Source: Fimbriosthenelais zetlandica (taxonomy: Eukaryota). Taken from it: a stretch of DNA of 64,000 nucleotides. A program made the position numbers and the translations under genes. The DNA lies in assembly GCA_977030845.1 (NCBI GenBank), contig OZ365112.1, positions 14,446,001 through 14,510,000 of the forward strand, read 5' to 3'. Positions within the stretch are counted from its first letter, which is position 1. The number at the start of each line of letters is the position of its first letter. This document shows, one piece after another, positions 1-55,164 of this stretch. Below the pieces are notes generated by a model. It was not told where the DNA came from and searched no databases. It saw only the letters and a program-made list of their open reading frames with translations.

Positions 1-3000
1 ACTATATGTTTTAGAATTAACTTAGGGCATGTCTTTACTTGAATGAAGATTATAATGCTTCTTAAAGACATATACTTACACCAACTTATTCCCCATACTT
101 CTATAATTGTTACTCATAAATCGCTAGTCCTAATTATATATGATTATTCAGACTCTTTGCTTTTTACTACCTAATTGTTATCATATAAAATCAACAGGTA
201 GTAAGCCTACTTATCAAAACCTTCCAGTCGGATGGACCCTGAGATTACTGCCCTTTCTGCATCTAGAATATGGTAGTTGCACAGGGATACATTCTTATAT
301 ATTTTTCTGCTCCAAACTCTTTGAAACAGTGTTTGCTTTCCGTCTGGTTTTTGGACCTATTATGTTGTATCTATTTCGTGGTGGCCATGCTTAGAACATA
401 GCACAGTGCCTGTTCTGCATGTCACAGCCTCAACATGACCTTCCATATACAGTAGCAAGGACCTGGGTGGGTGGGTGACAGGGTGGGGGGGTTGAAGCAG
501 TGTAGTTGCTCCACTGCCAACATATGTCTGTCACTATGATTCATGATCGACTAAGTGCTAAAAGGCTTGGGCCCAACATCCAGTTACAACCACGACTCCT
601 CATTCAACCTGTCACCACTCGACCTCTTCTAACTGGGAGAAATTGCACGCTTCTTTGATGTTCTCTCAATTATTGCCATCAGTATCACTATCATTTCTCT
701 CAGGTTAATAAGGTGATGTATTCACTTGACAAATAGTGCTGCAACATGAATGACTTTGGACTCGTTGAACTCAACCTGGCTCAACCTTGGCGCTCTATTT
801 CCCCATAGAGAGATAATGTTTAATAACACAAAAATGCATTCATTAATATATGGATGACCGTTAGATATTTACATCATGATAATGGCTAATTATATATATT
901 TGATAAGGGGGTAAAGCTTGGCGTCTTGACATTGTAATGTAGACTTCTGTACATTCTTCCTGTAATTTGTGATGCATGTAATAGTTCTTACCCAAAAAGA
1001 TAAATTAACTCTTCCAGTCATTAATTACATTAGGGGAATACTAGTAATAAAATCAGGATTTACTTTATAGCCTTTCAAAGTGGATACTTTTCCCAGTAGG
1101 CTTCTATAATATATATTTTTCTTCAAATGCCTACATACCTCTGAGGCTCTGTGAAAGCCGCTGTCCCCATTGCAAATGGCATTTCGTCATTTCGCATTTT
1201 AAATGGCCATTTTACAAAATAGAGAGAATATAAATTCAGTGAAACTGTAACAGAGAATAGCCATTTATTACATTGTTCGGCCTGAGTCAAAATCTAAGAG
1301 AATTTAGGCTTTAATATGGAAGACAATTGGAAGTCCCCTATTATCGCCCGGCATGTTTGCTATGACGATAGATTTGAATCTTTTCTCCCGCATTGCTACT
1401 CACAAATCAAAGCTGATATATTCAAAACGTCCCAATGATCTCACTGACTTATCCCTTGATTATAAAATCAAACCCGGCGGGGTGACCTCTTATTAGAAGG
1501 TGTCTAAACTACAGGCTTCCCCCTCTTAGACACCCACTCTGCCACCTACCCGGCTAATATAAGGCCTCATTTAAATCGATGACATAACCGAGTTGTTTGG
1601 TGTTTTGACTCGCCCATTCACTTCCAACCGACTATGTGTCACAACCTACAGACCACTGGGACTTTAATTTGTATGGAGAGACCCGGGAACCTTTGAAATC
1701 CCTACAATACCATTCGGGAAATGTCTCTTGTGCATTTCATCCGGGGGTGACGTAATCGTCCAAAGGGCCCAAGGCCAATAAATGGCAGAGGAGTTGGCGT
1801 TGTAAAAACCCCTATTGTTCAGGCTGGAGATGGGACTGGTCACTTGAATACATTGGTTTAGTGTTCCCAACTACCCCCGGGGCTATGGTAAGACCCCAGA
1901 CAGATGTGGTCAAAAGGCAAGTGGCCAAAGGTGATAGGGGCATTCTGGTATGCGAGTATTATTATTCATCGGCTGGTTTTTGATAGAAAGCCAGCGATCC
2001 TGGCCAATATTTTAGGACTTTCTGGACTAATTCTCCAAGGGTCTGTTTGTTTTGGAGATGTGACATCTTGTTTTGCCACTTTTTGGCCCAAACTGTTTGG
2101 CTATGGAGTTGATTTGAGTGATTACATCGTGTTTCCTTAGAATCTAATGAACCTAGACTTCTGAAAATATAATTGACTTTCCTACACAAGGATTCTGTTT
2201 GTCATGAACATTTCTGCAATAGTGAATATATCATATTTTGATATGAGTGTAGTAAGCCTACAATTTATATCAGAAAACCGGCATTTCTAGCAGTGTGAGA
2301 GAGACAATGAAACCACTTCTGTGAACGTATTTGTGCCCGATTACCGTGGCAGCCAGCTTGGTGATGCGCCTGTCCATGCTTGTCTTTTATTCATAGCTTA
2401 TGTAGTGGGATCATCTAGTAGGCATCACACACAGCCCCAAGACAATGTGGGGATGTCCTCTCCTCTCTTGCTTGCTTTCTCTGCCTCTGCTGTCATTTGC
2501 CTGACAGCGAGACAACTGCTAGCTGTCAAGGCTCAAATTCACATGTCCACATGTCACACAGTTCCCCGAGAACAACACAACACCCAACCCCTCACACAAT
2601 CACCAACCCCCAACCCTCCAACCCCCAACACAGCCACATTTACCACAACATGCTACAATCCAAACCCTCCCTTTCCCTAACTACTTATTATTATTTCTCG
2701 AATTACGTTTTATCCAAACAGAAAGTCAAGTCCCTTTATGGGACAAGGAAATGAAGAATGAAATGAAGCTGGAAAAGGACTTTGTCAGAATCCTGACGTG
2801 TATAAAAAGGCCATGATGTACTAAAGAGATACCAAGCAAAACACACAATTCTCCTGATATTGCTCTAAGCACGGTTGTGACTGACTCGGGGATTGTCATA
2901 TCATACATTGATCTCTTATTCAGCTATATCACCAGATGGAATATTGCCCTATACCCACATATATAATATATTGGGATTATAGAATATTCTATTACTATTC

Positions 3001-7631: not shown

Positions 7632-9805
7632 ATTTCGGTGATATTGGTGGTCCTGGTTCCAATGGTAGCAGCAACAACCCCCGCCGTCTGCGTACAGCCT
7701 ACACCAACACTCAGTTGCTGGAGCTAGAGAAGGAATTCCATTTCAATAAGTACTTGTGTCGACCCAGGAGGATTGAAATAGCTGCCTCTCTGGACCTGAC
7801 CGAGCGTCAAGTGAAGGTATGGTTTCAGAATAGGAGGATGAAATACAAAAGACAGACACACACAAAGCCTGAGCCGGGAGAGGGGGTGGTCTTAGGCGAT
7901 GACAAGGTCACCTCCAGCAGTCCCGGAGCTGAGAGCATCTCCATGGAGGAATGTAACCAAGGAAACGAGACCAAACTTCCGGTTTCTCACAAAGGATCGG
8001 GCAACACTGACAATAGTGGAGGGGGCAACAATAGCAATGTGAATAGACTGAATGTGGGTGTCCCTCAAGGTGGGGGAACAGGAGGAGGAGGTGGGACTGA
8101 TAGTGAAACCTCAGGCACTGAGACACCGCTGGGTACCGGAAACGGAAGTGAAGGCTCTCCACACGAGGAGGAGCGGAAGTGTGGGGACGTGACGTCAGTT
8201 ACTACGCTGGCGAGCGACGAAAATAGCAAGGACGACGTAGATCAGATGGAGGTGGATGCACTGAAATCAGAAAAGGATGATATCAGGGCCAGCACTTTAC
8301 GTAAAGGCTTGATAGCAGGACCTGATGTTGTCAAGAGATTCTGTGGCGATAGTAGTCAAGTCGAGGGAGGGATACATCTAGACGGATTTAAAGTAGAGAA
8401 AGAAGTCGCGATTTCCCGGGCAGGGTACCACCAAACGGTGGATCCCGTAGAATATAATTATAGCATATCTGGGACTAGTTCAGAGAAATCCACCCCTTCC
8501 TATCCCATCTCGTCACATCAGTATCTATCCTCTGTCAAGTATCCTCTGTCAGCCTCACAATTAAATCACAGCAACCACCCACCTGGAGGTGGGCCTGGAG
8601 CAGGAGCGCCGTCCCATCCAGGGTTAGACGCCAGACACCCGCTCTCCCCACCTATATCCCCCCACCCAGGTGCTGTAATGCCTGTCACAAGACAACACTC
8701 GGCTGGGATAGGATGCTATGGACCTTCTCCAGGTTATGGTACTCCAGGGTATGACAATATGTCCCATACAGGAGCAGGAGGGGTCGGAGGAGGTGGAGGA
8801 GAGGCCAGGTCTTCACCCCTCAGTCCTGCTTGCTCGAGCACATCCCCATCCAACCATAGCAACCTCACCACTACCGCCACGCCACCTCGTGTGCAAGACA
8901 GGTTCCCTGGTTACACCAACATGGCTACCAGTTACCAAGGCAACGGACCAAGCTCCCTTCATCATCAGCAGTCATCGCAGCAACAACAGCAGCAGCAGCA
9001 ACACCCGGGTTATCGGCAACCTATGGTCCATCCCAACAATAACCCGGGCTATTTTGCTCAGGGTAATTTTGGGCCTAGAATGACTAATTATGACATGAAT
9101 TGTACTGACTTGAGCAGCAATGAACAGATCAGATCGTCACAAGGAGGAGGAGCAGGAGGAGGGGGAGGCCCAACAATAACAGGGGCTTACATGGAACATG
9201 ATACTAGATTCAATGCTCAAATTCATACGCAACAACAAACCCAAAATCCACAGCAACACAGACAAATGAACTATTCGGGGAATTTCTCCTCTTTGCATCT
9301 CAATAATGGAATGAACAGGCTTCATGGGTATATGGATAGGACTAGGGACAATATGCTCCAGAGCAACGAGATGGGCATGGAACAGCAGCACTATGGCGTT
9401 CCTAGTTACCACGGATACCAAGTGAACGGGCAAACGAATATGGTTCAGAATACTGTCAATCATTATGGCGGTTATAGTCGCGACCAGGGACAGATCCAAC
9501 ATTTCATTTCCAATGGTCAAATACATTCTAATGCCCAAATGGGTGTTAACAATAACGTTTACCAACAACAGCAGTCAGATCCAAACGTACCTCAACAGAA
9601 TCGATTGGCAGACCAATACAGCAATGAACTAGCGAGAGAAAATTGTGATTCAAATTTCAGTAGCAACTATAGCATGACAGACTATGGAAATGCAACCACG
9701 CACACCGGAAATGGAGAGCCAAATATGGCTTCCCCTTCCAGCGAATCCCCAGACTACAATATTTTCTCTGAATTTTGTGCCTCCACACCAGGAGGGTTCT
9801 ATTGA
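7632..9805 (+). CDS. pb: Hox2/proboscipedia homeodomain transcription factor, terminal coding exon (5'-partial gene)
   Basis: After the phase-1 acceptor the frame reads (D)[75 protein letters not shown], a diagnostic paralog-group-2 homeodomain ([27 protein letters not shown]). It stays open to TGA at 9803-9805. Confidence 0.96.
7679..7858 (+). other. pb: Hox2 homeobox (180 nt, no internal intron)
   Basis: 60 codons from P(CCC, 7679) to T, matching the Antp-class homeodomain register. Confidence 0.95.
8979..9003 (+). repeat. CAG/CAA repeat encoding a polyglutamine run in the Hox2 tail
   Basis: cagcaacaacagcagcagcagcaac; the translation shows [12 protein letters not shown]. Confidence 0.85.
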
Positions 9806-17100: not shown

Positions 17101-20100
17101 AATCAGAGTCTCCTATCTTACATTTTCCAAATTGACTGTATATATATGGAGACTAACTTCAGTTAAATTGCAAAAAGAATTGCCGATTTTGAATTGGAAT
17201 TTAAATTTCCATAGATGGTTTGAACGGCCTCATGAATGGCATGAAATCGGTAGAAATTTATGGACAAATTTATGATGTTCATAAATAAACTTAGTTCATA
17301 TGCTAGTCAGGAACGATGACTAATTTTTACAGTGTTGTATGCTATTCATGATATTAATAAGGTCAATACTGTGCTCGTCACGGAAGCTATGCAAATGAGC
17401 GCCTGAAACGACAGGCAAGTCAAATTACTGCCGCCAGAGGGAAGGACGGTAGGTCGGACATCAGCAACAGGGTATAGTATAACCACAAATTAAGAGCCCG
17501 TCTACTGCTCGCCACAATAGAAAGCCCGGTTAAATATAATGCATTTATGATTGGCAGGGATGATAGTTAGTTGTCATCCCAAATGATAATTACTCGGGAG
17601 TAGGGCAATTATTTTCGGTGTTTTGTTGTGATATTCTAGTTTGAGGATCGATATTATGTTCGCTCTAGTTTGAAACTGAGCCGGAAAGTGCAGATCAGTG
17701 ATGCAGAAAAGAACGTCATAACGAAAAGGACACTATTGTAGTACTAGACCTTTCTAAAATCTTTAAGGCCGAACCACCCAAAGTGTTTCAGATCAGGGCC
17801 ACAAGGTCTAGCAGTCGTATAAATACAGGGATGAGTGCACACGAATATAGCTGAATTTTAGCAGTGTTATGCATATGATGACACGTTTTTGAGCGGGAAG
17901 CATGAATAATTCCACACTCTTGCGGTCCCATATCAATAAAATGTCAACGCAACACTTCATAGAAGGCCACCTGCATATAATGCCCTCCCTTCTATACGGA
18001 CAACGAGGTGGGGAGGATTTTTTGGCAGAAAAAGAATCAAAACATCGGTTTTCTGCACAAATTCCAGCCCTTTGATGCCTCTTTACATTGTCTATGTTCT
18101 CAGGGTCCACGAACCGTGACCACTGTGCTATAAGGGCTTTCACATGGGTCCTGTCAGTACTGAACGAGGGGGGATGGACCTGCATAAAAAGGGCTTCACA
18201 TGGGCATGTCATCCGACAGGGGGAATTTTTTAAATTAACCTGAAATTCCATTTCTCATTTCAAAATCTTTATGTCATCCACACAAAGTTACAAAACCCCT
18301 CTGCTTTGTTACTGAAATGTATCATTTTAATGATATTTATTCCTGAATTAGGCCGGGTTTGGGATGTGTTTGTGGGTCTTTGGTGGGGGAGGGGTGTTGG
18401 GTGGGGGGCAGGTGAATGCTTGTTTGTGGGTATCATTGACGGGGGTCGTCACGCTCGAGTGCACACCAAAGATGGGGCAGGCGAGGGTTTGACATTGATA
18501 CCAAGCAGTGCTATTGTCTGACCCAGCTGGCTTCACAATGGCGTCCACTGCACGTTAACAACCAGATCGTCCCCCACCCGCCTTTTTAACAGAAAACATC
18601 ACCATTGATACTGATTGTAACTTCTCTGCCGGGCCAGTCAAGCCCTAACAGACATCCTCCCAGTTATCCACCATTCTAACACTCCAGAGGTCTTCTCCAA
18701 GACCCACCGAAGTGGAAGAATGGCAGGGACTTAAAAAAAAATACAATTCCATTAAAACTTGGCTTATTTCCATGACTTTAAGAGCTAAAAGCATTCATAG
18801 TGTGGTTATATTTAGAAAGATGGTAATCAGGGCTCTAAATTTGGCATGCAAGTTTGAAATGCCAGTATACAAATATAAACCAGTGCTAACATTCCTGTAT
18901 GATTCTGATTCAGTTGTTTTTGATAATTCAATGACACTTATTAACTATAGCTACAATTGATTACATTATACCCCCAATGTACTTTCATCTCAAATCTCTT
19001 TCAATTTCTATTGTATCTTCTGCTATTCTCCAACTGTCTATTTTGCTCTCAGTGGTCTTTCACACCGTCACCTCCCCCATCCCTCATGCTTTGACTCCAT
19101 GCTTTTCCCAGCTTTATTTAATCTATCATTAATTATAACAGGATGAGTCATTGACTCTGCTAATGGTTATTTCATCCACGGCTCGATGCTCCTTAAATGA
19201 TAACCTCACAAGAAAACATATTAATCAAACCCATACTGACGGACTTACTCCGAAAGGGATTAGGGTCCTATCTATTTGTAGCAGAGCCTATTTGAGACCT
19301 GTCCCTTCCTATTTTTACCTCAAAATTTCTGACCATAAGAGACGGCTACCTTTCTCATGCAGAAACTGTCATCATGTACATGAAGAGTGATACAATGTTG
19401 CTAACAGGCATCAGCTTAATCTGAGAATAGACATCAAATGATGATATGGTCTATATCATAGAAAAACGGCCATTAATAATGCAGCAGGTTTTCTATAAAT
19501 ACATCTTCCGTACTAAATGAATCCCATTGTGTCAATCAAGAGAGATGCGCCATCAATCCCGTCCTTGAGTGACTCCTTTCATTCCATCCTTTCCACCAGC
19601 CATTACCAAGAATGAGGTCAGGAATGACAGAAGTCCTCATTATATGTGAAAGATGATTAATAGGGTGTTTATCTTGATGAGTCTGGCTCATACACAGTCA
19701 AAATAATATGATATAATGACAAGATTGTGGCAAAAATAGCAGAAAAATATAGGATAGAGTGCGAAAAGTGTGCCAAAACGTACGATGTTATGGCTGGTAA
19801 GTCGCTCCGCCAGCCTCAGTGAGTAGTATATGGAATCTTTCTTTGGGGCAGGCGACATTTGGGATGCTACTATGTCGGCGCCACAATCACAGCGCGTGAG
19901 AGCTAATGGCGCCAGCATTACAAAGCGATGAGTGGTCTCCACCGTCTAAATCGATAAGAATTAGATCAGTTCATCTGAGTCAATCCAAAGAGGAACTATT
20001 AAACGATGAACAAACAATCGATACAGTGTCTGAATCGGTCTGGCTTTTGGAAGGGCAATTCCAAGACATTGGGAAATATGGACAATATATGGGTCAAGGT

Positions 20101-25489: not shown

Positions 25490-26120
25490 ATGAATTCCAA
25501 CGGGGAGTATACCATATGTAACCTGGACAATCATACCTATTCGTCCAACTATGGTTCAGCCGATGGCATTGCAGCCAGTTCGGGATATGGTGGAGGATAC
25601 CCTAACGTAAACAATGGTTTGGCGGAGTCAGGCCAGCTGGGATACGGCGCCAATGCGCCCGTTCCTCCCGTCTCCTCCGGGCCCGAGCACCTGGGCCATC
25701 ATGGGCAACATCCACACCAACCGGGTGGTCATAGCATGTATGGACACCATCAAAATCAAACGTCCGTCATTTCTCCAACATCTCCGCCACCTCCACATGG
25801 CTATGGGCCTTTGCAACACCACCCCCATGCCCATCATAACTCGTGTCTCCCGCCTCCTGGACAACATTTCGACTATTATGGGGGATCGGTTATCACGAAT
25901 GGATCCCCGGCGGGAGTGGACCTTAACACTGGACTTTATTCTCCGTATGGCCCTCCGGAGCCCTCTCCGGGCCAACCTCACTGTGGGATCCCTACCACAT
26001 CAGGACCACATCATTATGATATCCACGATTCCCCCGTTCACAATCTCTCCCCTTCTACGGACCACCCTCCCGTCACCACGTATAAGTGGATGACCGTCAA
26101 AAGAAGCGTTCCAAAGCCAG
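25490..26120 (+). CDS. lab: Hox1/labial exon 1
   Basis: Starts MNSNGEYTICNLDNHTY (Hox1-type N-terminus), then a His/Pro/Gly-rich region and the labial hexapeptide TYKWMTVKR (YKWM at 26081-26092). Ends at a consensus donor CAG|GTGAGT (26120/26121), phase 1. Confidence 0.95.
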
Positions 26121-46226: not shown

Positions 46227-46540
46227 CAACGAAGGTTGATTATGGTTACGTACCTCCCGGACAACCGAACATGGGTCGGACGAACTTCACCAATAAACAA
46301 CTCACGGAGTTGGAAAAGGAATTCCATTTTAACAAATACCTAACACGGGCGCGGCGGATCGAGATTGCCGCCGCCCTAGGACTTAACGAAACTCAGGTGA
46401 AAATCTGGTTTCAAAACAGACGGATGAAGCAAAAGAAGCGAATGAAGGAGGGGAGCGTCCCAGGAGTAGTGACTAATGGTACAAATGGTACAACGACGGA
46501 AAGCCAGGATCCCTCACTCACAAGTGAAGACAGCAGATAA
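46227..46540 (+). CDS. lab: Hox1/labial exon 2 (homeodomain and short C-terminus)
   Basis: (A)[76 protein letters not shown]...SEDSR*, a diagnostic paralog-group-1 homeodomain ([38 protein letters not shown]). TAA at 46538-46540. Spliced CDS is 945 nt, 314 aa. Confidence 0.97.
46265..46444 (+). other. lab: Hox1 homeobox (180 nt, no internal intron)
   Basis: 60 codons from P(CCG, 46265) to M. Confidence 0.95.
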
Positions 46541-47005
46541 AGGCAAATGGAACGTCGAGAAAAGACAGTGAGAAAAGAACAATTATACGAGAAAAACAAA
46601 GCATTTTTGTTGAACTTGAAGTGCCCAAAATGTAGGACTTTTTCTGGTGAAAATGTGTTACTGTACAGTCAAACGATCACTTTTTTCAAGGTGGAAATTT
46701 TCATTGTCAAAACTGCATTGCCGCTATATGTATTTAGGGATCAACGAAGTTTATATTAATGCCAATACTGAGGCCAAATATTCCCTAAAGACTTCCCGCA
46801 GTCGCCAATTTCCCCTCGCCCTCGCTCTCGGATGCTGTAGGTGAAATCTTGTGATTGTGTACACGCTCACTTCCGGGACGTCACGAATGCTCCATGCTTT
46901 CAGCGGAAGGGCAGAGAGGAGTGGTGACAAACTGTATTAAAACGCGGCAATGGCCTGTAAAAGTGTGGTAATATTGTGATGCACTGATTAAATACAAAAT
47001 ACACA

Positions 47006-47027
47006 TCGAAATCGGTTGAACAGGGTA
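47006..47027 (+). promoter_or_regulatory. miR-10-family target site 1 (8mer plus 3' supplementary pairing)
   Basis: tcgaaaTCGGttgaACAGGGTA. The ideal complement of UACCCUGUAGAUCCGAAUUUGU is ACAAATTCGGATCTACAGGGTA. Confidence 0.7.
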
Positions 47028-47857
47028 TTCTAACACGATTCGAAAACTATTTTCCAAGGTGGCGGAGGAATACACGCTTTTGTAGCGTTGTGACTTGCCG
47101 CGACCAGCGAAAGAACAGTTGAACTGTGGCCGGGATCAAGCTCTCGCGTGGCGCGAGACTTCGCGAGAGACAGGAAAAGGAGAGGCAGAAGGGCCCGTTG
47201 CGATCATCATCGATCTAATCAAAGTCGTCTGTTCAGTATGACGTCATCATAATCAAAGCCTAATAAGGAAGGGAACGCCATAAATGCAAAGCAACACGCC
47301 ATTGTGCGTGCAGACAGAATGAACTATCTTCCTCGACCCAAGCCGAGCTCTCCAGCTTTGGAGGGAGTAATGAGGTTGACGTTGGTGGCACACGACTAGA
47401 TATCTTATCAGAAAAAGATTCTTTTGTGAAAAAGTGAATAGATTAATCACCCTTTTCCTCCTGGCTGCATTTATGGATGAGAGATATATTGAAATTTTAA
47501 ATTTTGTGTTCCAAAATTATGAACTATATATAGGTAATATATAACTGTTCCGACTTGATAATTTGCTTAACTTAAAGTTGGTGTTTGAACGCGTATACAT
47601 ATATCAGTGCCAATGTTTTGGAATTAAAAGGCTGGGATAAAAATAAAAGACGTTCAAAATGAGATATCCTGACGGAATGTTGAAACAGTGAGATTGAAAC
47701 AATGGGAAAACATTACAGGTTTCTGTGATGTTTGAAGAATGGACGGGTGGACAGAGGAAAGATAGGGAAGAGAAGGGAAGAGGAAGACAGGAAATGAGAG
47801 CAAATTCTGCTCTCATTTTGACAGACTTGAAATAAAGGCCACTTCTCATTGTTGTGA

Positions 47858-47867
47858 CTACAGGGTA
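47858..47867 (+). promoter_or_regulatory. miR-10-family target site 2
   Basis: CTACAGGGTA is the complement of miR-10 nt 1-10. Confidence 0.55.
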
Positions 47868-48570
47868 AAAACTAATCTTTCACTTATTGTGGTGCACTCA
47901 GTTCAACATGCGGTTCTCTACACCCATGTTGTGTGTCTATACAAGTTAAAAAATATTCATCAATGAATCAAGTATGTGTACATAAAAACACTCGTGTCTA
48001 GGTAATTTTCATTGAAACGGCAGTCACACACACAGATTGACTGTGTTTTTGCAACACTGTCATTACACTGGAATTCAAAATAGTACGTCATGAGAACATG
48101 ACAAACCCTCCACTGATAATCATGATTTTGGTTTTGCATCATTTTGTTCAAGTTAATATCTAATGTAATTCATTTTACACCTGCCGAAGGAATCAGTAGG
48201 GTAGGAGAATTCGGTGATTTTGAATTGTTTTGATTCTCATGGACATCCGCTGATAATAATTATTTTTGTTTTATTTATTACCAGGATCTCATGACAAACA
48301 GTAATTCCCATGTTAAGTTTTCTCAAAATGACCACATTTTTGTCTACAGAAACCATAAATGAATCAAACTGCAGACTTTCTGAGATAGTTCAATAGGAGT
48401 TAATGCGCTCACCTTACGTTATCTAAGCAGATTATATTGGCTGTTTTATTTTTAATACTCAACTTCAGGAAAGGAGACCACTAAGTGCAATAATTAATAC
48501 GATGATATTATACAAAATATACGTGATGCAAATATTCTTGAAGTTCGATAAGTCAAGCAATGAACGGAAG

Positions 48571-48579
48571 TACAGGGTA
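48571..48579 (+). promoter_or_regulatory. miR-10-family target site 3
   Basis: TACAGGGTA is the complement of miR-10 nt 1-9. Confidence 0.55.
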
Positions 48580-51500
48580 GGCCACTTGTTCTTATTGATT
48601 TGAACCCAAACTATAATAAATGCTGACAGTGCAATATATTTGCTGAGATAACAGATAGGTATGGGTTGGCAGTAGTTTCCAAAGAAATCACCCCAGACAA
48701 TTAGAGAATATCACATATCTGTGAGATATTCACATTGGCTTTGAAAACGGGGGATGGGCCATACTGCTATATGTATTGTGTATATGGACTCACAACATGT
48801 ACTTAATATTTAAACATGATATTGCTAATCCACACCTGCTAAATATTCCAAATATTGTTGAAGAAATGAACTCCTGAAATCGACAAGTAGACAATCATGT
48901 CATGTTGGTGCCTAAGAATTAACCCCTTTCCAATTACAGTTTCCAACTCGATTGTTCATCATTAATCTTTTAAATGGTTATCAAGTTAGTTTTACAAAAA
49001 CCTCCCACTGAGTGTGTCACTGTCTTCTTCTAGGAATGTACTGGTGAAATTATGAATTACCATTAATATCCTAAATGGACATTCAAATAATTGCTGGCAG
49101 AAAAGACAATGCTTAAACAAAATTTATACTCCTTGATTTATCAGAGGAATTAGCTGTTTTTAGAAAATTTGCTTCTTATAATATTTTATCTGTTTTTCAA
49201 AGAATCGTGTTTATTGTTTGCACTTCCTTTTCGCTGCAACAGAACTACAGAAAATAATAAAGCAATATGCACAATTATATAAGACCACAACTGAAAGAAG
49301 CCATCTTCTATAAGTATCGGAAAAATATGGAAACAGACCTTGTACATTTCTCCTTACCCATCCCTGCTTAATAGTAGCTGGTCACGTGACAAAAAAACGG
49401 TGTAAAATATTGTATACATACCAACACCGCTATCAAAAAGGAATATTTATCGTTATATTTATTTCAAAGTCTGAGATTCAAATTGTGGAGTTGAGCTATA
49501 TCGAGGTATTCGTTGGGTGTATTGTATTTTTGTCTATGTTGTACAGAGGTATATGAACATTATGATGTATATGTGTTTTCCACACTGACTGTTGACTTGA
49601 GGTGGGTGGGGAAAAAGTGAAGGCCACCTGAAAGTTGGCCCGTTTTTGATTGTGAGTGTAAATTATCATTTATCTAACTATGAGGAGCTTGTGGTAACAG
49701 GATATATATATTTCTGGTAAACTTTTTTCTTTATATTCTCCAGAAAACAGTTAAGGATGGTCAACTGTAATGTTAATTTCTTGTAATTTCCACTCAATTT
49801 TAAAATTCCATGTTTGTAAGGTACAATCTATCTTGTCAGGAGAGAGAAGAGGGGGGAGTTTCTTCTGTTAATTATTGTACAAAGGATAAGTTGCCAAGCC
49901 AACATTTCTGACTGGGAATTTGTTGACTGATTCGTTATAAGCTGTATGGATATGTTGACAAGACGGGTTTTTTCAGTTTAATATGTTAGTTATTATACTT
50001 ATTTCTTATCTTATTTGTATTAGGGTGATTATAATTGTAAAAAGAGAAAATATTGGCACTAAATTAACCGAATTTATTATTTTTAGTGAAATGATTAATT
50101 TGGTCAATAATAGTTACAAACGTTATTATTTGTTACAGGAAAATCTGAAAGAGACTTTGTGGTTAATATTCTGAGACCTGTTTGTGATTTATGCCCATAT
50201 AGGGTCCGGAGGCAATAAAGTGCACCCTCACTACTCAGTTTTTATGTTATCTTTGCAAAGTGGATACAAATTGTAGTATCTAAGTAATTTCTCACATGCA
50301 TGTACAAGGACATGGACTTTGTTTGGTTCTTTACAATATAAATGTGTATCATAGAAATATTGACCAGATTCTCCAGAAATACGTGTCATGGGGAGATCGC
50401 ATACACAACCAAAACGAGCCATTACAAATGCCCAACACAGGTGGGAGAATAATTTAGCTTGGTTTATGAGACAAAAGGTGTCTTGTTCCCCATTGGACAG
50501 GAGGACAAATGAAGGAGCAAGAATGAGATATAGGCCTGTGTATATAGCTTACGGTGGGTCAATTATCTCTCTGCATCTGTGATTGCCAGGTGCGTTGGCA
50601 TGTGTCTTTGTGATAGAACCTCGACTAATAAACTAGAGCGATGGTCTCTATAATTTCTATAGAGCCTGGGAACCGAGAAAATCCCAAGAATATCGTCCTC
50701 TAACATTAGTGCCATTTGAGGTGTAGGGCTAGTTCTTTACCTTTTACCCCTAAACAACTTTTCAGCAAATTGTTAGCAATGCATAAGCCCTCAGATTTGT
50801 ACATGTCGGCCTATGTCTTCTCTGGGACTTGGCGAAACTTGTGTAACAATTTGTAGGCTATATATAGAGTACATGTCAATCATTTAGACTGGTGACCGTG
50901 TGTGCATGATATCAACGGACGTTTAGGTTACAAGTAATGACTGCTAGCGCTAGATATTGAATTGTTATAAGCCGCTAACAATGCTTACGCCTTTGGTTAT
51001 ACAGCTAAGAGATTGTTATTCAAAATTCAAAATACCTATAGGCCCATCCTAGTAATCGAAACAGTGCCCATGCAAACACAGTTTATAGGTCTAACAATAT
51101 TTTTATTGACTTCTCTGTGCCTACTTGGCTCTATTTCCATATTGCTCTTTGGTCGGAATTCTTCATAGACCGGGGTAATAATAATTCGTCTGCTGGACAT
51201 TGCCCGAGCGACCATACTCAGGGAGCGACAGGAGGATAAATCAAATTCTTCGATTTTCCATCCTGGCATCCATAGGTCGTCCTGGTTACTACCCCCTTGT
51301 CAAGAGTCTGTCTGGTTGGGAATTTCGCCCGAGCAGCATAAAAATGGTTATTTTGTCTTGTATGGGGTCGGTTTGGGGTTGATAGCCTGGCTTCCTATAT
51401 TCCCCACTGCCTGCACAGAGCCAAATTGCCTATAGCAAGCCACCGACTGCTATCATCGAGCGATAATGGGGGGTCAATGAGACTGCACATGCCTGTATCT

Positions 51501-53192
51501 CACTTGAATCATCGGGCAACCATTTGTATTCACCCAAGGAACCGTAACCTCACCGAATCTCGTCTTGCTCCTTGTGGGCGAGACTTGAGAGAGAGAGAAA
51601 GAGCACGTGATAGCATCCCAGCACCCCCCGCAGAGACGCAGGTCATCATATCACCCTCCACTGCCATTCTACAATCTCTTCATGCAACTCTCGCGCTAAT
51701 CTCGGCCCCAGGAGATTCTCACGAGACCTGCGCTCACCAAGGTGACTGCGCGGAGCTGAGGAGGATCTTAATTCTAGTTGAGAGAAGTGACCTTCAATTG
51801 CCTTCAACTTTCCTCATGATGACTACTGCCCCATGCCCTGAAGAAACTATCGGATGGATGGTAAGCTTCTTTTGAATATTTTAGTCCTAATTACGTAAGA
51901 TAAAGTGTACAACTCTATTATATCTTCTCCCTGTGTCAATGTATTCACTTGTCAACAGAGTAGAAATGACCAGAAATTGACACCTGTATTAAACCTATAT
52001 ATGGCCTTGATTATTGTTTTGCTGTGAGGGCCTATATATATACTTGGTCGGGAGCCGGGCGGTCAAGGGACCAGGTCCGTCGGTTCGGAGGTGGATCACA
52101 GCCATTATAGTACTGAGGTATAGCAGGTCGATAAATATCGACCCCTAAATGTATAACAAAGCCCTTTAGGGACAGCTGGCCCTCTCCACTCTCCTATATT
52201 TCTTAGAGAAGTTGATGGGGTGATATAGCCCTGGTCCCTCAACTAATCTTTGTCCGTCTTTACTGGACACTTCCAGGCAATGTTCCAATAACTAAATGGC
52301 CGACTCTGTACAGCATTATCTCTTATCTATTTTCGTCATTTTCAGCGTTCATGTGATTTTCTCTCCGTCAGTACGCTTAACCATTTCTGGTTGGGGTTCT
52401 TCATGAACAAGGGTGGGTACGGTAATGATCTAATTCCCGGACACCCCTCCCCTTGGTCATCTTTTCCATACCAACTCCATATTATAGCCTACAGGACCCT
52501 CGACTTTCGCTCTCCCCTTCTTTTGATTTTACCCCCCGTGAATGCAATATTGATCCAAAGTTCCATTCTGGGGTGTGATTCGCCGCCAGTGAAGTGAAAA
52601 CCTTTTCGACTCTGCTGAACCGTGAGGGGCAAAATATAATTGATTTCTCTCAGTCTGGTTGTATCATGATTACATACAAAGAAGCAAATCATCATAAATC
52701 GATCTTCTGAATGAATTTTTATACAGATTACAGTAACTTAACTTGTCCCCATAAGACTATAGGCCCCTATATATATGTGGGAAATAAGGGAGTTATTGGT
52801 TTAGGTAATGATATTGATCATAGGTTATAATAGAGATAAATGTGCCGAGAGGCCTATAGGTATACCCGATATTGCTTTTTAACCCCATTCTCTTCACCAC
52901 CCTGTCGTGTACGGCACCTATTCTGATCAAGATTACGTAATGTTCGGTTAGGAGCCATCTTTATGTATATGGGGCAATACAGGCAGGGTGCGTGGGATGG
53001 GTTGGGAGGTCGTGAGTAAAAATTGGGGACAATGGTTTCTAATAGGCATCAAATAGGCGACTCATTTTAAGCAAACATATTTCCAATGATACGTGTATTG
53101 GATCTCCAATAAATCTTGAATAAATATAGGTTTACAACAACAGAAATGACCTTCAGCAGATATAAATTTCCTGATGCATACTATATCCTAAA

Positions 53193-53221: not shown

Positions 53222-55164
53222 CCAAGATCCTAACTTACTCAGCTAGGGGCCTGATAATACTATATACATGTATAGGGTTTGGAACGTGGTTGCCGTGGTA
53301 ACCGATTTATTTCGGCCGGGTGCGGACCGTATCAAGGTAGGCAGTGAAGCGTTAATCCGGGACCTGATTCCAGACGCTAATCTCGGCGTTCTCCCGTAAT
53401 CAAGCGGCCAGACGCTGATTAAGTTCCCAACTTCCCTCGCGGGACACGCGAGAGACCGCGAGATGTGCTAGGGGTGCGTGGAAAGGACAGTGTAGCTCCC
53501 ATTAAAAAGAAGGGAATATACAGTCAGATATGCCAGCTATTTTGTGGAAAAACGGCCTCAAGACTTAAACACGGCCTGACGAAGAGAAGCCCCGATTTTT
53601 ACAGATTTCTCCATGCTCATATGATATAATATGGGTCAGCGAATGAGCAGCTTATAAAGGTGATCATGGTGATCATTTGTCTGTCCCCTCTGGTGGGTCT
53701 CTGAGTGACCATGCACATGATTTAGTGGTCAGATAATAAGCACAGGCAGGTCAACGGTCCGGTGAAGAAGGGAACATTGATGGCAAGACAGTACGAAGTG
53801 GGTCTGTATTGCTCCACGGCCCTATTATAATCATGAAAATGAGTATAATTTGATTCTAGTTCTAGACGTCAATCCCTGACCACATTTTAGCATGTACATT
53901 GCTAACAGTTCAAAATAATTGATCTGCGGTTTAATATTTGGCAATTTTGCATGACCCTACCACCTTGCATTCTATGGGCAGATGTTTGCATGCCTCATAT
54001 GTATACAATCGAAGAACTTAATCAACTCTAGAGCTGATAGCACTGAGCAATGTATTTCAATTTGGGATTCATTGAACATCTGCACGTGTAACGTATACAC
54101 ACACATACAACACATTAATTTATTTCCGTGTCCGGCTTTGTTGGGGCAACGCACAATAATTTGTATCGACATGTAGTAACCAACATGCGAGCTTCATTTG
54201 CTTCTGTTGGCATGCGATGGACACTGCATTGGCTGGACTGTCATGCTATGCAACATGGTATTAATTCGAAATGTACATGATCAGTATGAGGGGTGTATAT
54301 TGCTAATGATCATTAGTAACTTCATTAGCAGCTATTGGAAGTTTGGGTATATGAACATGGGTCATTCCAGAACTGGGAGCAATTGGTCATTTTGGCACAG
54401 TTTTTCCAATCCCTTTCACCCTTATAGTGCATGAAAATGCAACTTATTGAACGCATTGAGATGGCATCTAACACTCTTATATTCCCCTTTCTCTGAGTAT
54501 ATATATAACAAGTCTTCTCTGAAAGTATTCGGCAATTACTGCCTTGCATTTGTCCTAGTATGCAAAGCTGCAACACCTGTATACATAGACAGATAATGGA
54601 TATTTGAATAACCTTAAATAAGCATTGTACGAGGATACAGATGTATACTTGTCAACAACAGCATTAATGTATGACCACATAATTATGGACAAAATACCAG
54701 TCTATTGTGACACAGTAAGACACCCAGGCTCATTTAAATAGCTATAGTAGTGGTATCAATGTGTGTGAGAAGCTGTGGTCAGTGGATTTTGGTGATGTGT
54801 CCAGCTCATCCATCACAGAAGCTGTCACATAGGTTGAACCTCTACACCTGGTCTCATTACTAAAGGCCACCTAATTGGGGCAAGCTGGGTCAGCCATGGT
54901 CCCCACACCTTAATCTCCTACAATTGACCAATCCAACATACTCCAAATCAATTGTCCTCAATAGAAATTCAAGGCTTGGTGGATACAGGTTGGCTCGGTC
55001 TGGGAGTGAACATGCAGAAACCTTAGTTACACGTACCTCGGAATTTCTACATTAGGACGGGGTTCCATTCAAAGGCATACATCTGTACAAATATCCTTTT
55101 AAAGAAATTGCCTTGCCTCTGTCTTGCTTCTAAATGATTATCTTTAACATGAATGCTCTCTGTG

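What the first reader, a model, noticed from the sequence alone, without database searches (positions are those of the whole stretch)
47006..48579. Three perfect miR-10 8mer sites downstream of Hox1, one with canonical 3' supplementary pairing
Seen: ACAGGGTA occurs at 47020, 47860 and 48572. I noticed only one other copy in the 64 kb (17467). A rough base-composition estimate gives about 0.03 copies expected in this 2.1 kb. Site 1 also pairs miR-10 nt 13-16 (CCGA:TCGG) in exact register, plus nt 11, 18, 19, 21 and a G:U at 20. Sites 2 and 3 extend the seed to nt 10 and nt 9. Known: miR-10 (and miR-993-5p, same seed) is encoded in the Hox cluster near Hox4, and vertebrate miR-10 represses Hox1-group mRNAs. 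Inference: posterior Hox-cluster miRNA repression of Hox1 may be shared by protostomes and deuterostomes.
Basis: partly seen in the sequence, partly recalled or inferred. Interest (0 to 1): 0.8.

Follow-up and report, generated by a model that had tools for sequence, protein, structure and literature searches.

The report
Conserved miR-10 sites after annelid Hox1
Three perfect binding sites for the Hox-cluster microRNA miR-10 lie just downstream of the Hox1 gene of this annelid-like genome and are kept in several distant relatives whose surrounding sequence has diverged, so miR-10 very probably represses Hox1 here as it does in zebrafish.

Summary
ACAGGGTA occurs at 47020, 47860 and 48572 on the sense strand, 480, 1320 and 2032 nt after the Hox1 stop codon. 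About 0.03 copies are expected there, so P(≥3) is about 2–7e-6.

The strongest evidence is comparative. I scanned all 65,536 8-mers in the 2.5 kb downstream of Hox1 in seven lineages. ACAGGGTA is the top non-repeat word: 14 copies in 6 of 7 lineages, against 0.22 expected. Without the window it is again first (7 copies in 4 of 4 lineages, P ≈ 1e-10).

All copies are sense-strand full 8mers. They are islands in sequence that otherwise does not align. At site 1 the TCGG that pairs with miR-10 nt 13–16 is also conserved, across a variable 4-nt spacer.

A conserved AATAAA at 50214, after which similarity stops abruptly, suggests a 3' UTR of about 3.7 kb that contains all three sites.

Limits:
- No RNA data could be obtained, and repression is not shown.
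- The sites are absent from Lamellibrachia, a scallop and 19 other labial-type loci. Only weaker matches occur in Owenia and Lineus. Common descent with the vertebrate miR-10/Hox1 link is therefore unproven.

Verdict: a real, apparently unreported, new instance of a known kind of regulation.

The parts
25490..26120 (+). Hox1 exon 1: ATG to the GT donor, includes the hexapeptide TYKWM
   Evidence: ORF and the donor cag|gtgagt. Homologues are 86/70/62% identical, and the nearest named one is Chaetopterus CH-Hox1.
46227..46540 (+). Hox1 exon 2: labial-class homeodomain and C-terminal tail, stop TAA at 46538-46540
   Evidence: Translation. Best hits are annelid Hox1/labial proteins.
46541..50235 (+). 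Inferred Hox1 3' UTR, about 3.7 kb. The extent is inferred from conservation, not from RNA.
   Evidence: The proximal block 46541-46668 is conserved with L002. A conserved AATAAA at 50214 is followed by abrupt loss of similarity.
47005..47027 (+). miR-10 site 1: 8mer at 47020-47027 plus 3' supplementary TCGG at 47012-47015 (pairs nt 13-16), with a 4-nt unpaired spacer
   Evidence: AATCGG-N4-ACAGGGTAT is invariant in W, L004, L002 and L003, while the flanks are about 36% identical to L002.
47840..47941 (+). Conserved block of about 100 nt that contains miR-10 site 2 (8mer 47860-47867, pairing to nt 10 from 47858)
   Evidence: 84% identity to L002, where the rest of the UTR does not align; alignments.
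48564..48579 (+). miR-10 site 3: 8mer at 48572-48579, t9 pair at 48571, and CGG at 48565-48567 pairing nt 13-15
   Evidence: The 8mer and the CGG are kept in L004 and L002, while the L002 flanks are 20% identical, which is the random level.
50214..50233 (+). Conserved poly(A) signal AATAAA plus 14 invariant nt. Similarity to the relatives ends here.
   Evidence: Four-sequence alignment: the signal and GTGCACCCTCACTA are invariant, followed by divergent U/GU-rich sequence. The blastn blocks of L004 and L002 both end at 50233.

Best explanation
The three ACAGGGTA words are selectively maintained target sites for a miR-10-family microRNA (seed ACCCUGU) in the long 3' UTR of Hox1. Argonaute loaded with miR-10 would bind each 8mer. 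Sites 1 and 3 are reinforced by pairing to miRNA nt 13-16 and 13-15. Binding would recruit the usual deadenylation and decay machinery and lower Hox1 mRNA and protein wherever miR-10 is expressed. miR-10 is encoded further 5' in the Hox cluster, near Hox4. In other animals it is expressed in a Hox4-like trunk domain. The expected effect is therefore to clear or dampen the most anterior Hox gene in more posterior tissue, which is a post-transcriptional form of posterior prevalence. Shown here: the sites, their enrichment, their strand specificity and their conservation. Inferred: that the mRNA reaches them, that miR-10 is present and co-expressed, and that repression occurs.
For: (1) There are three 8mers within 1.6 kb against about 0.03 expected in the 2.1 kb after the stop. 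(2) A hypothesis-free scan of all 8-mers in the 2.5 kb after the Hox1 stop in 7 lineages ranks ACAGGGTA first among non-repeat words: 14 copies, 6 of 7 lineages, 0.22 expected, Poisson 7.7e-21. Leaving out the window (L002+L006+L010+L012) gives 7 copies in 4 of 4 lineages, P 9.6e-11, again first. Control regions (2.5-5 kb downstream, intron) give only single-lineage tandem repeats. (3) L006, L010 and L012 share no detectable UTR similarity with the window, yet they carry 2, 1 and 1 8mers. In a 7-sequence alignment the 8mer is the only invariant block. (4) All copies are on the sense strand and none on the antisense strand. Nearly all seed matches are full 8mers with the A opposite nt 1. (5) The supplementary pairing is conserved: TCGG at site 1 across a variable spacer (TTGA versus AATT), and CGG at site 3. 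(6) A conserved AATAAA with a sharp end of conservation lies at 50214, downstream of all three sites. (7) There is precedent. Zebrafish hoxb1a has three miR-10 sites validated with sensors (PMC2148072). Vertebrate miR-10 preferentially targets Hox1-3 (PMC3394115). Annelids carry several Mir-10-P1 paralogues in the Hox cluster (PMC12257675).
Against: There is no transcript evidence: none of the RNA or DNA runs I asked for was listed. The window has ATTAAA at 46936 and 46987 and AATAAA at 47642, 47831 and 48615, so shorter isoforms could lack some or all of the sites. No mir-10 hairpin lies in the window, and its presence about 195 kb upstream rests on unchecked earlier notes. The conserved blocks around site 2, and others further 3', could be DNA enhancers rather than UTR. 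The sites are missing in Lamellibrachia, a scallop, an annelid-like locus with 4 kb of downstream sequence (L018) and other labial-type loci. In Drosophila, conserved Hox miRNA sites gave no detectable embryonic effect (PMC3290615).
Confidence: 0.8

Rival explanations
1. The sites are real miR-10-family sites, but they act in a transcript other than the main Hox1 mRNA. That could be only a rare long 3' UTR isoform, or a separate downstream non-coding RNA that binds or buffers miR-10.
For: Several poly(A) signals lie upstream of or between the sites. No RNA data were available. Conserved non-coding blocks continue several kb beyond the gene.
Against: The UTR is conserved from the stop codon onward (46541-46668). 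A single conserved poly(A) signal follows all three sites. Site 1 lies within 500 nt of the stop in four lineages. None of the early signals is conserved between the window and L004.
Confidence: 0.1
2. ACAGGGTA is a DNA-level motif: the binding site of a transcription factor in a 3' Hox1 enhancer, as with the 3' retinoic-acid elements of vertebrate Hox1 genes. The match to miR-10 would be coincidental.
For: Site 2 sits in a 100-nt block conserved well beyond the 8mer. A CRE-like TGACGTCA at 47239 is also conserved. Vertebrate Hoxb1 has a functional 3' enhancer (PMC2148072).
Against: All copies in all lineages are on the sense strand. The word is exactly the miR-10 8mer, including the A opposite nt 1. 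Two sites keep register-correct complementarity to miR-10 nt 13-16 while their spacers and flanks drift. I know of no factor with this motif (own knowledge).
Confidence: 0.04
3. The cluster is a chance cluster or an artefact of composition or repeats.
For: The window-wide count is unremarkable. About 58 other 8-mers also form triplets somewhere in the window, and three others do so in this same 2 kb.
Against: The motif recurs independently in relatives, with the motif fixed beforehand (P about 1e-10 without the window). There are no shared flanks within a species. There are no copies in 27.9 kb downstream of 19 other labial-type genes.
Confidence: 0.01
4. The effector is another small RNA, or a miR-10 paralogue other than the canonical one. 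Candidates are annelid Mir-10-P7 or -P8, which have the same seed but differ at nt 13-16, or miR-993-5p.
For: Annelids have five Mir-10-P1-type loci in the Hox cluster, some with an identical seed (PMC12257675). Earlier notes report an extra paralogue in this genome.
Against: The conserved TCGG and CGG fit the canonical CCGA at nt 13-16. miR-993 matures from the 3' arm. This rival is a refinement of the main explanation rather than a contradiction of it.
Confidence: 0.05

Closest known systems
Zebrafish miR-10 repression of hoxb1a (Woltering & Durston 2008, PMC2148072)
   Same: There are three seed-matched miR-10 sites in the 3' UTR of a Hox1-group gene. The miRNA is encoded more 5' in the same cluster, near Hox4. 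The proposed role is in posterior prevalence.
   Different: The zebrafish sites were validated with sensors, morpholinos and overexpression, whereas here there is only sequence and conservation. Vertebrate Hoxb1 sites are weakly conserved outside teleosts. Here all sites are 8mers, two have conserved 3' pairing, and the animal is a spiralian. Homology of the sites is not shown.
Arthropod miR-10-5p sites in Scr/Hox5 (Lemons et al. 2012, PMC3290615)
   Same: These are conserved miR-10-5p sites in a protostome Hox 3' UTR, standing out as islands in poorly conserved sequence.
   Different: The target there is Hox5, which neighbours mir-10, not Hox1. No labial/Hox1 sites are reported in that paper. 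In Drosophila the 3p arm dominates.
Canonical 8mer sites with 3' supplementary pairing (general model of animal miRNA targeting; own knowledge)
   Same: A perfect match to nt 2-8, A opposite nt 1, pairing centred on nt 13-16 across a short unpaired loop, preferential conservation, and A/U-rich flanks.
   Different: The sites are 700-840 nt apart, too far for the short-range cooperativity known for closely spaced sites, so they probably act additively.

Membership tests
Canonical animal miRNA target site (8mer) | Watson-Crick match to miRNA nt 2-8 plus A opposite nt 1 | tested here: met
   ACAGGGTA at 47020, 47860 and 48572. The seed ACCCUGU is stated in 10.1101/2024.12.01.626237, and the mature sequence is printed in 111 papers.
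Canonical animal miRNA target site (8mer) | Lies in the 3' UTR of an mRNA, on the sense strand | tested here: inconclusive
   The sense strand is confirmed. No RNA runs were listed. A conserved AATAAA at 50214, where conservation ends, argues for a 3.7-kb UTR containing the sites.
Canonical animal miRNA target site (8mer) | Conserved above the level of the surrounding UTR | tested here: met
   It is the top 8-mer of 65,536 across lineages, with and without the window. It is the only invariant block in a 7-sequence alignment. Flank identity is 20-36% against L002.
Canonical animal miRNA target site (8mer) | The cognate miRNA is encoded and expressed in the same organism and tissue | not tested
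   No mir-10 hairpin lies in the window. Earlier unchecked notes place mir-10 about 195 kb upstream. Expression cannot be tested with these tools.
Canonical animal miRNA target site (8mer) | The target responds to the miRNA (reporter, knock-down, AGO-CLIP) | not testable with these tools
   This needs an experiment.
3' supplementary site | At least 3-4 contiguous pairs centred on miRNA nt 13-16, in register across a short loop | tested here: met
   Site 1 has TCGG pairing nt 13-16 and site 3 has CGG pairing nt 13-15 (plus nt 12 in the window). Both are kept in L004 and L002 while the spacers change.
Ancestral bilaterian miR-10/Hox1 interaction (homologous to the vertebrate one) | Sites present in Hox1 3' regions of outgroups across Spiralia/Protostomia | tested here: not met
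   There is no 8mer within 6 kb in Lamellibrachia, Mizuhopecten, Owenia or Lineus. Owenia has a 7mer-m8 at +381 and a 7mer-A1 at +1197, and Lineus has 6mers and 7mer-A1 sites. There are none in 19 other labial-type loci.
Hox1/labial gene | Labial-class homeodomain, hexapeptide, and position 3' of Hox2 in the same orientation | tested here: met
   The homeodomain and TYKWM are present. The best named hits are annelid Hox1 proteins. The upstream homeobox ORF at 7715-9805 on the + strand looks pb/Hox2-type; that assignment rests on my own knowledge of the homeodomain, not on a search.

The most novel reading that the evidence does not exclude
Repression of Hox1 by the cluster-encoded miR-10 is an ancestral nephrozoan interaction. 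It would have been retained for over 500 million years in annelids and vertebrates and lost or weakened in lineages such as bivalves, siboglinids and arthropods. On this reading, miRNA-based posterior prevalence was part of the original Hox system.
Probability: 0.15. Interest if true: 0.8.

Novelty: new member of a known kind. Interest (0 to 1): 0.55.

Why it matters
Hox-cluster microRNAs are thought to reinforce posterior prevalence. Direct evidence comes almost entirely from vertebrates and flies, and in flies the effects are barely detectable. A spiralian Hox1 gene with three perfectly conserved 8mers, two of them with conserved 3' pairing, is a clean and strong candidate interaction. It can be tested in annelid models with reporters, antagomirs or site deletions. 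It also gives a concrete character, miR-10 sites in Hox1 3' UTRs, that can be mapped on a phylogeny. That would show whether the vertebrate miR-10/Hox1 link is ancient or convergent. In five full-text searches on miR-10, Hox1 or labial (and the papers read) I found no report of it. This means none was found, not that none exists.

Tried and rejected
- Transcript evidence: two searches for sequencing runs (RNA, then any kind) listed nothing, so read laying was never used.
- Rfam: there were no matches in the window at gathering thresholds, and none in 46400-50400 at E<=1.
- Taxon names: the assembly and run accessions of the related contigs matched no paper. Cluster look-ups gave no names. A Hox1 protein tree resolved only the clade W+L004+L002+P0002 (99/99) and left L006, L010 and L012 in an unresolved polytomy with named annelids. 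I therefore call them 'annelid-like lineages' and cannot state the taxonomic breadth.
- Failed look-ups: Lingula Hox1 was not on record. P0024 contigs had no DNA available.
- Transcript contigs of annelid Hox1: the full-length Logan candidates have mollusc-type or non-annelid-type tails.
- Structure of the site-2 block: RNAalifold gives a conserved hairpin but no covariation with three sequences.
- Hox2 sites: I first thought the CAGGGTA words in the Hox2 ORF came from PGY codons. Only one of the three does.
- One Markov simulation timed out and was replaced by the analytic estimate.

Full report
**What is there.** The window carries two Hox genes on the + strand. A homeobox ORF at 7715-9805 looks pb/Hox2-type; that class assignment is from my own knowledge of the homeodomain. 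Hox1 has exon 1 at 25490-26120, ending in the hexapeptide TYKWM and a cag|gtgagt donor. A 20-kb intron follows, then exon 2 at 46227-46540, which encodes a labial-class homeodomain and stops at 46538-46540. The closest named proteins are annelid Hox1 proteins from Chaetopterus, Platynereis, Perionyx and Lamellibrachia. No Rfam family, and so no mir-10 hairpin, lies in the window.

**The observation.**
- ACAGGGTA occurs four times in 64 kb, all on the + strand: at 17467, 47020, 47860 and 48572.
- The last three lie 480, 1320 and 2032 nt after the Hox1 stop codon.
- The total count is not unusual for the window. The clustering is: 0.023-0.035 copies are expected in 46541-48620, so P(≥3) is 2e-6 to 7e-6.
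- Triplets of some 8-mer are common (58 words in the window, three others in this same 2 kb). The local number alone would therefore be weak had miR-10 not been an a priori candidate.
- The flanks of the three copies are unrelated, so this is not a repeat.
Site 1 pairs nt 13-16 through TCGG at 47012-47015. Site 2 pairs through nt 10 and site 3 through nt 9. Site 3 also pairs nt 12-15.

**Relatives.** Searching with the two exons and fetching the encoding contigs gave Hox1 loci from several other lineages. The 8mer positions, counted from the stop codon, are in the table. No locus has an antisense copy in that region.

| Locus | Relation to the window | 8mer positions after the stop |
|---|---|---|
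| L004 | exon 2 identical, exon 1 of the same taxon 86%, UTR about 74% identical | +452, +1208, +1747, +1917 |
| L002 / L003 | exon 2 89%, exon 1 62% | +451, +1227, +2143, +4886 |
| L006-L009 | exon 2 78% | +1139, +1470 |
| L010 | exon 2 74% | +1336 |
| L012 | exon 2 77% | +386 |

**Is this conservation or shared ancestry of the whole UTR?**
- blastn shows that the window aligns along most of the UTR only with L004.
- With L002 it aligns only in short islands: 46541-46668, the site-2 block 47840-47941, and blocks further 3'.
- With L006, L010, L012 and Lamellibrachia it aligns nowhere outside the coding exon.
- Anchored comparisons show that the 8mers are islands. At site 1 the L002 flanks are 36% identical, and the matches are concentrated in AATCGG and the 8mer. 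At site 3 the flanks are 20% identical, which is the random level, and the CGG pairing nt 13-15 is kept.
- At site 1 the spacer between TCGG and the seed match changes (TTGA versus AATT) while both paired segments stay. This is the expected signature of a seed plus 3' supplementary site.
- When seven site contexts from five lineages are aligned, ACAGGGTA is the only invariant block.

**A hypothesis-free test.** I counted every 8-mer in the 2.5 kb after the stop codon in seven lineages.
- ACAGGGTA is present in more lineages (6 of 7) and in more copies (14) than any other word.
- Only dinucleotide and tetranucleotide repeat words of one or two lineages are more over-represented than it (0.22 expected, Poisson 7.7e-21).
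- With the window removed, so that the hypothesis is fixed in advance, L002+L006+L010+L012 give 7 copies in 4 of 4 lineages (0.13 expected, P 9.6e-11). It is again ranked first.
- The same procedure on 2.5-5 kb downstream and on the intron yields only single-lineage tandem repeats.
- Nearly every seed match in these lineages is a full 8mer. Within 6 kb there is one 7mer-A1 and one 6mer. This points to selection for the A opposite nt 1 as well.

**Does the mRNA reach the sites?** No sequencing run was listed for this DNA, so this is inferred. The window has several poly(A) hexamers before and between the sites, but none of the early ones is shared with L004. By contrast, an AATAAA at 50214 plus the next 14 nt is invariant in the window, L004, L002 and L003. 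It closes a strongly conserved block. Similarity then stops abruptly and gives way to U/GU-rich sequence. That is what a conserved cleavage and polyadenylation site looks like. It implies a UTR of about 3.7 kb (46541 to about 50235) holding all three sites. The fourth L002 copy, at +4886, lies beyond this point.

**How far does it go phylogenetically?**
- A Hox1 tree supports only the clade window+L004+L002+P0002. L006, L010 and L012 fall outside it in an unresolved polytomy with named annelids. The sites therefore occur in at least four mutually distant lineages, whose names I could not obtain.
- Lamellibrachia has no seed match within 6 kb.
- Owenia has a 7mer-m8 at +381 and a 7mer-A1 at +1197.
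- The scallop Mizuhopecten has a single 6mer.
- The nemertean Lineus has 6mers at +135 and +802 and 7mer-A1 sites at +2674 and +5310.
- A survey of JGI metagenome contigs gave 19 further labial-type loci with 27.9 kb of downstream sequence. These look like clitellates, a bivalve, arthropods and one annelid-like locus with 4 kb downstream. None has an 8mer on either strand.
- The feature is therefore real but restricted. The data do not show that it is ancestral for protostomes.

**Mechanism.** The best reading is ordinary miRNA repression. miR-10, or a paralogue with the same seed, binds three strong sites in the Hox1 3' UTR and lowers Hox1 output where the miRNA is expressed.
- Earlier notes of this scan, which I could not check, place mir-10 next to Hox4 about 195 kb upstream in this genome, and another paralogue further 5'.
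- In zebrafish, three miR-10 sites in hoxb1a mediate repression, and miR-10 acts together with Hoxb4 (PMC2148072).
- Reviews note preferential targeting of Hox1-3 by vertebrate miR-10 (PMC3394115).
- In arthropods the conserved miR-10-5p target is Scr, with no detectable embryonic effect in Drosophila (PMC3290615).
- Annelids have five Mir-10-P1-type loci in the cluster, some differing only at nt 13-16 (PMC12257675). The conserved TCGG fits the canonical CCGA.

**Rivals.**
- A DNA-level motif is disfavoured by strict sense-strand bias, the A opposite nt 1 and register-correct 3' pairing.
- Chance is excluded by the replication without the window.
- The main residual doubt is whether the dominant transcript includes the sites.

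**Verdict.** The target-site interpretation is strongly supported by comparative evidence but not shown experimentally. The deep-homology inference remains open and is, if anything, weakened by the outgroups. I found no report of these sites in the papers searched. This is a new member of a known kind of regulation, of moderate interest.

Noticed in passing
window 48485-48492 and 48629-48636: There are two copies of GTGCAATA, which is the 8mer for the miR-92/25 seed AUUGCAC (seed from memory). Both are kept in L004. The word has 6 copies in 4 lineages in the Hox1-downstream sets (P about 1.6e-5).
   Followed up: partly
window 47238-47249: ATGACGTCATCA, which contains the CRE-like palindrome TGACGTCA, is invariant in the window, L004 and L002. 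The palindrome is the second most over-represented non-repeat 8-mer across lineages (7 copies in 3 lineages). It could be a DNA element inside the UTR region.
   Followed up: partly
window 47905-47930: A conserved inverted repeat AACATGnGGT...ACCCATGTT lies about 40 nt 3' of site 2. The stem is invariant and the loop is variable in three lineages. With so few sequences there is no covariation.
   Followed up: partly
window 8421, 8745, 9059 and 17467: Three CAGGGTA words (7mer-A1 for miR-10) lie inside the Hox2 exon-2 ORF, against about 0.1 expected. The fourth ACAGGGTA 8mer lies between Hox2 and Hox1. This recalls the ORF sites of zebrafish hoxb3a. Conservation was not tested.
   Followed up: no
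window 49322-50233, 51421-51495, 51673-51708, 53287-53335: There are further blocks conserved with L004 and/or L002 downstream of site 3. The first block ends at the conserved poly(A) signal. The later ones lie beyond it and may be enhancers.
   Followed up: partly
window 46541-46668: The first ~130 nt of the 3' UTR are strongly conserved with L004 and L002 (TTTTTGTTGAACTTGAAGTGCCCAAA...TGTACAG). The function is unknown.
   Followed up: no
L002 15192 (+4886) and L003 15016 (+4710): A fourth ACAGGGTA in this relative lies about 850 nt beyond the conserved poly(A) signal. It is either a chance copy or evidence of a longer isoform.
   Followed up: no
window 26121-46226: The single Hox1 intron is about 20 kb here, against about 7.8 kb in L012.
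   Followed up: no
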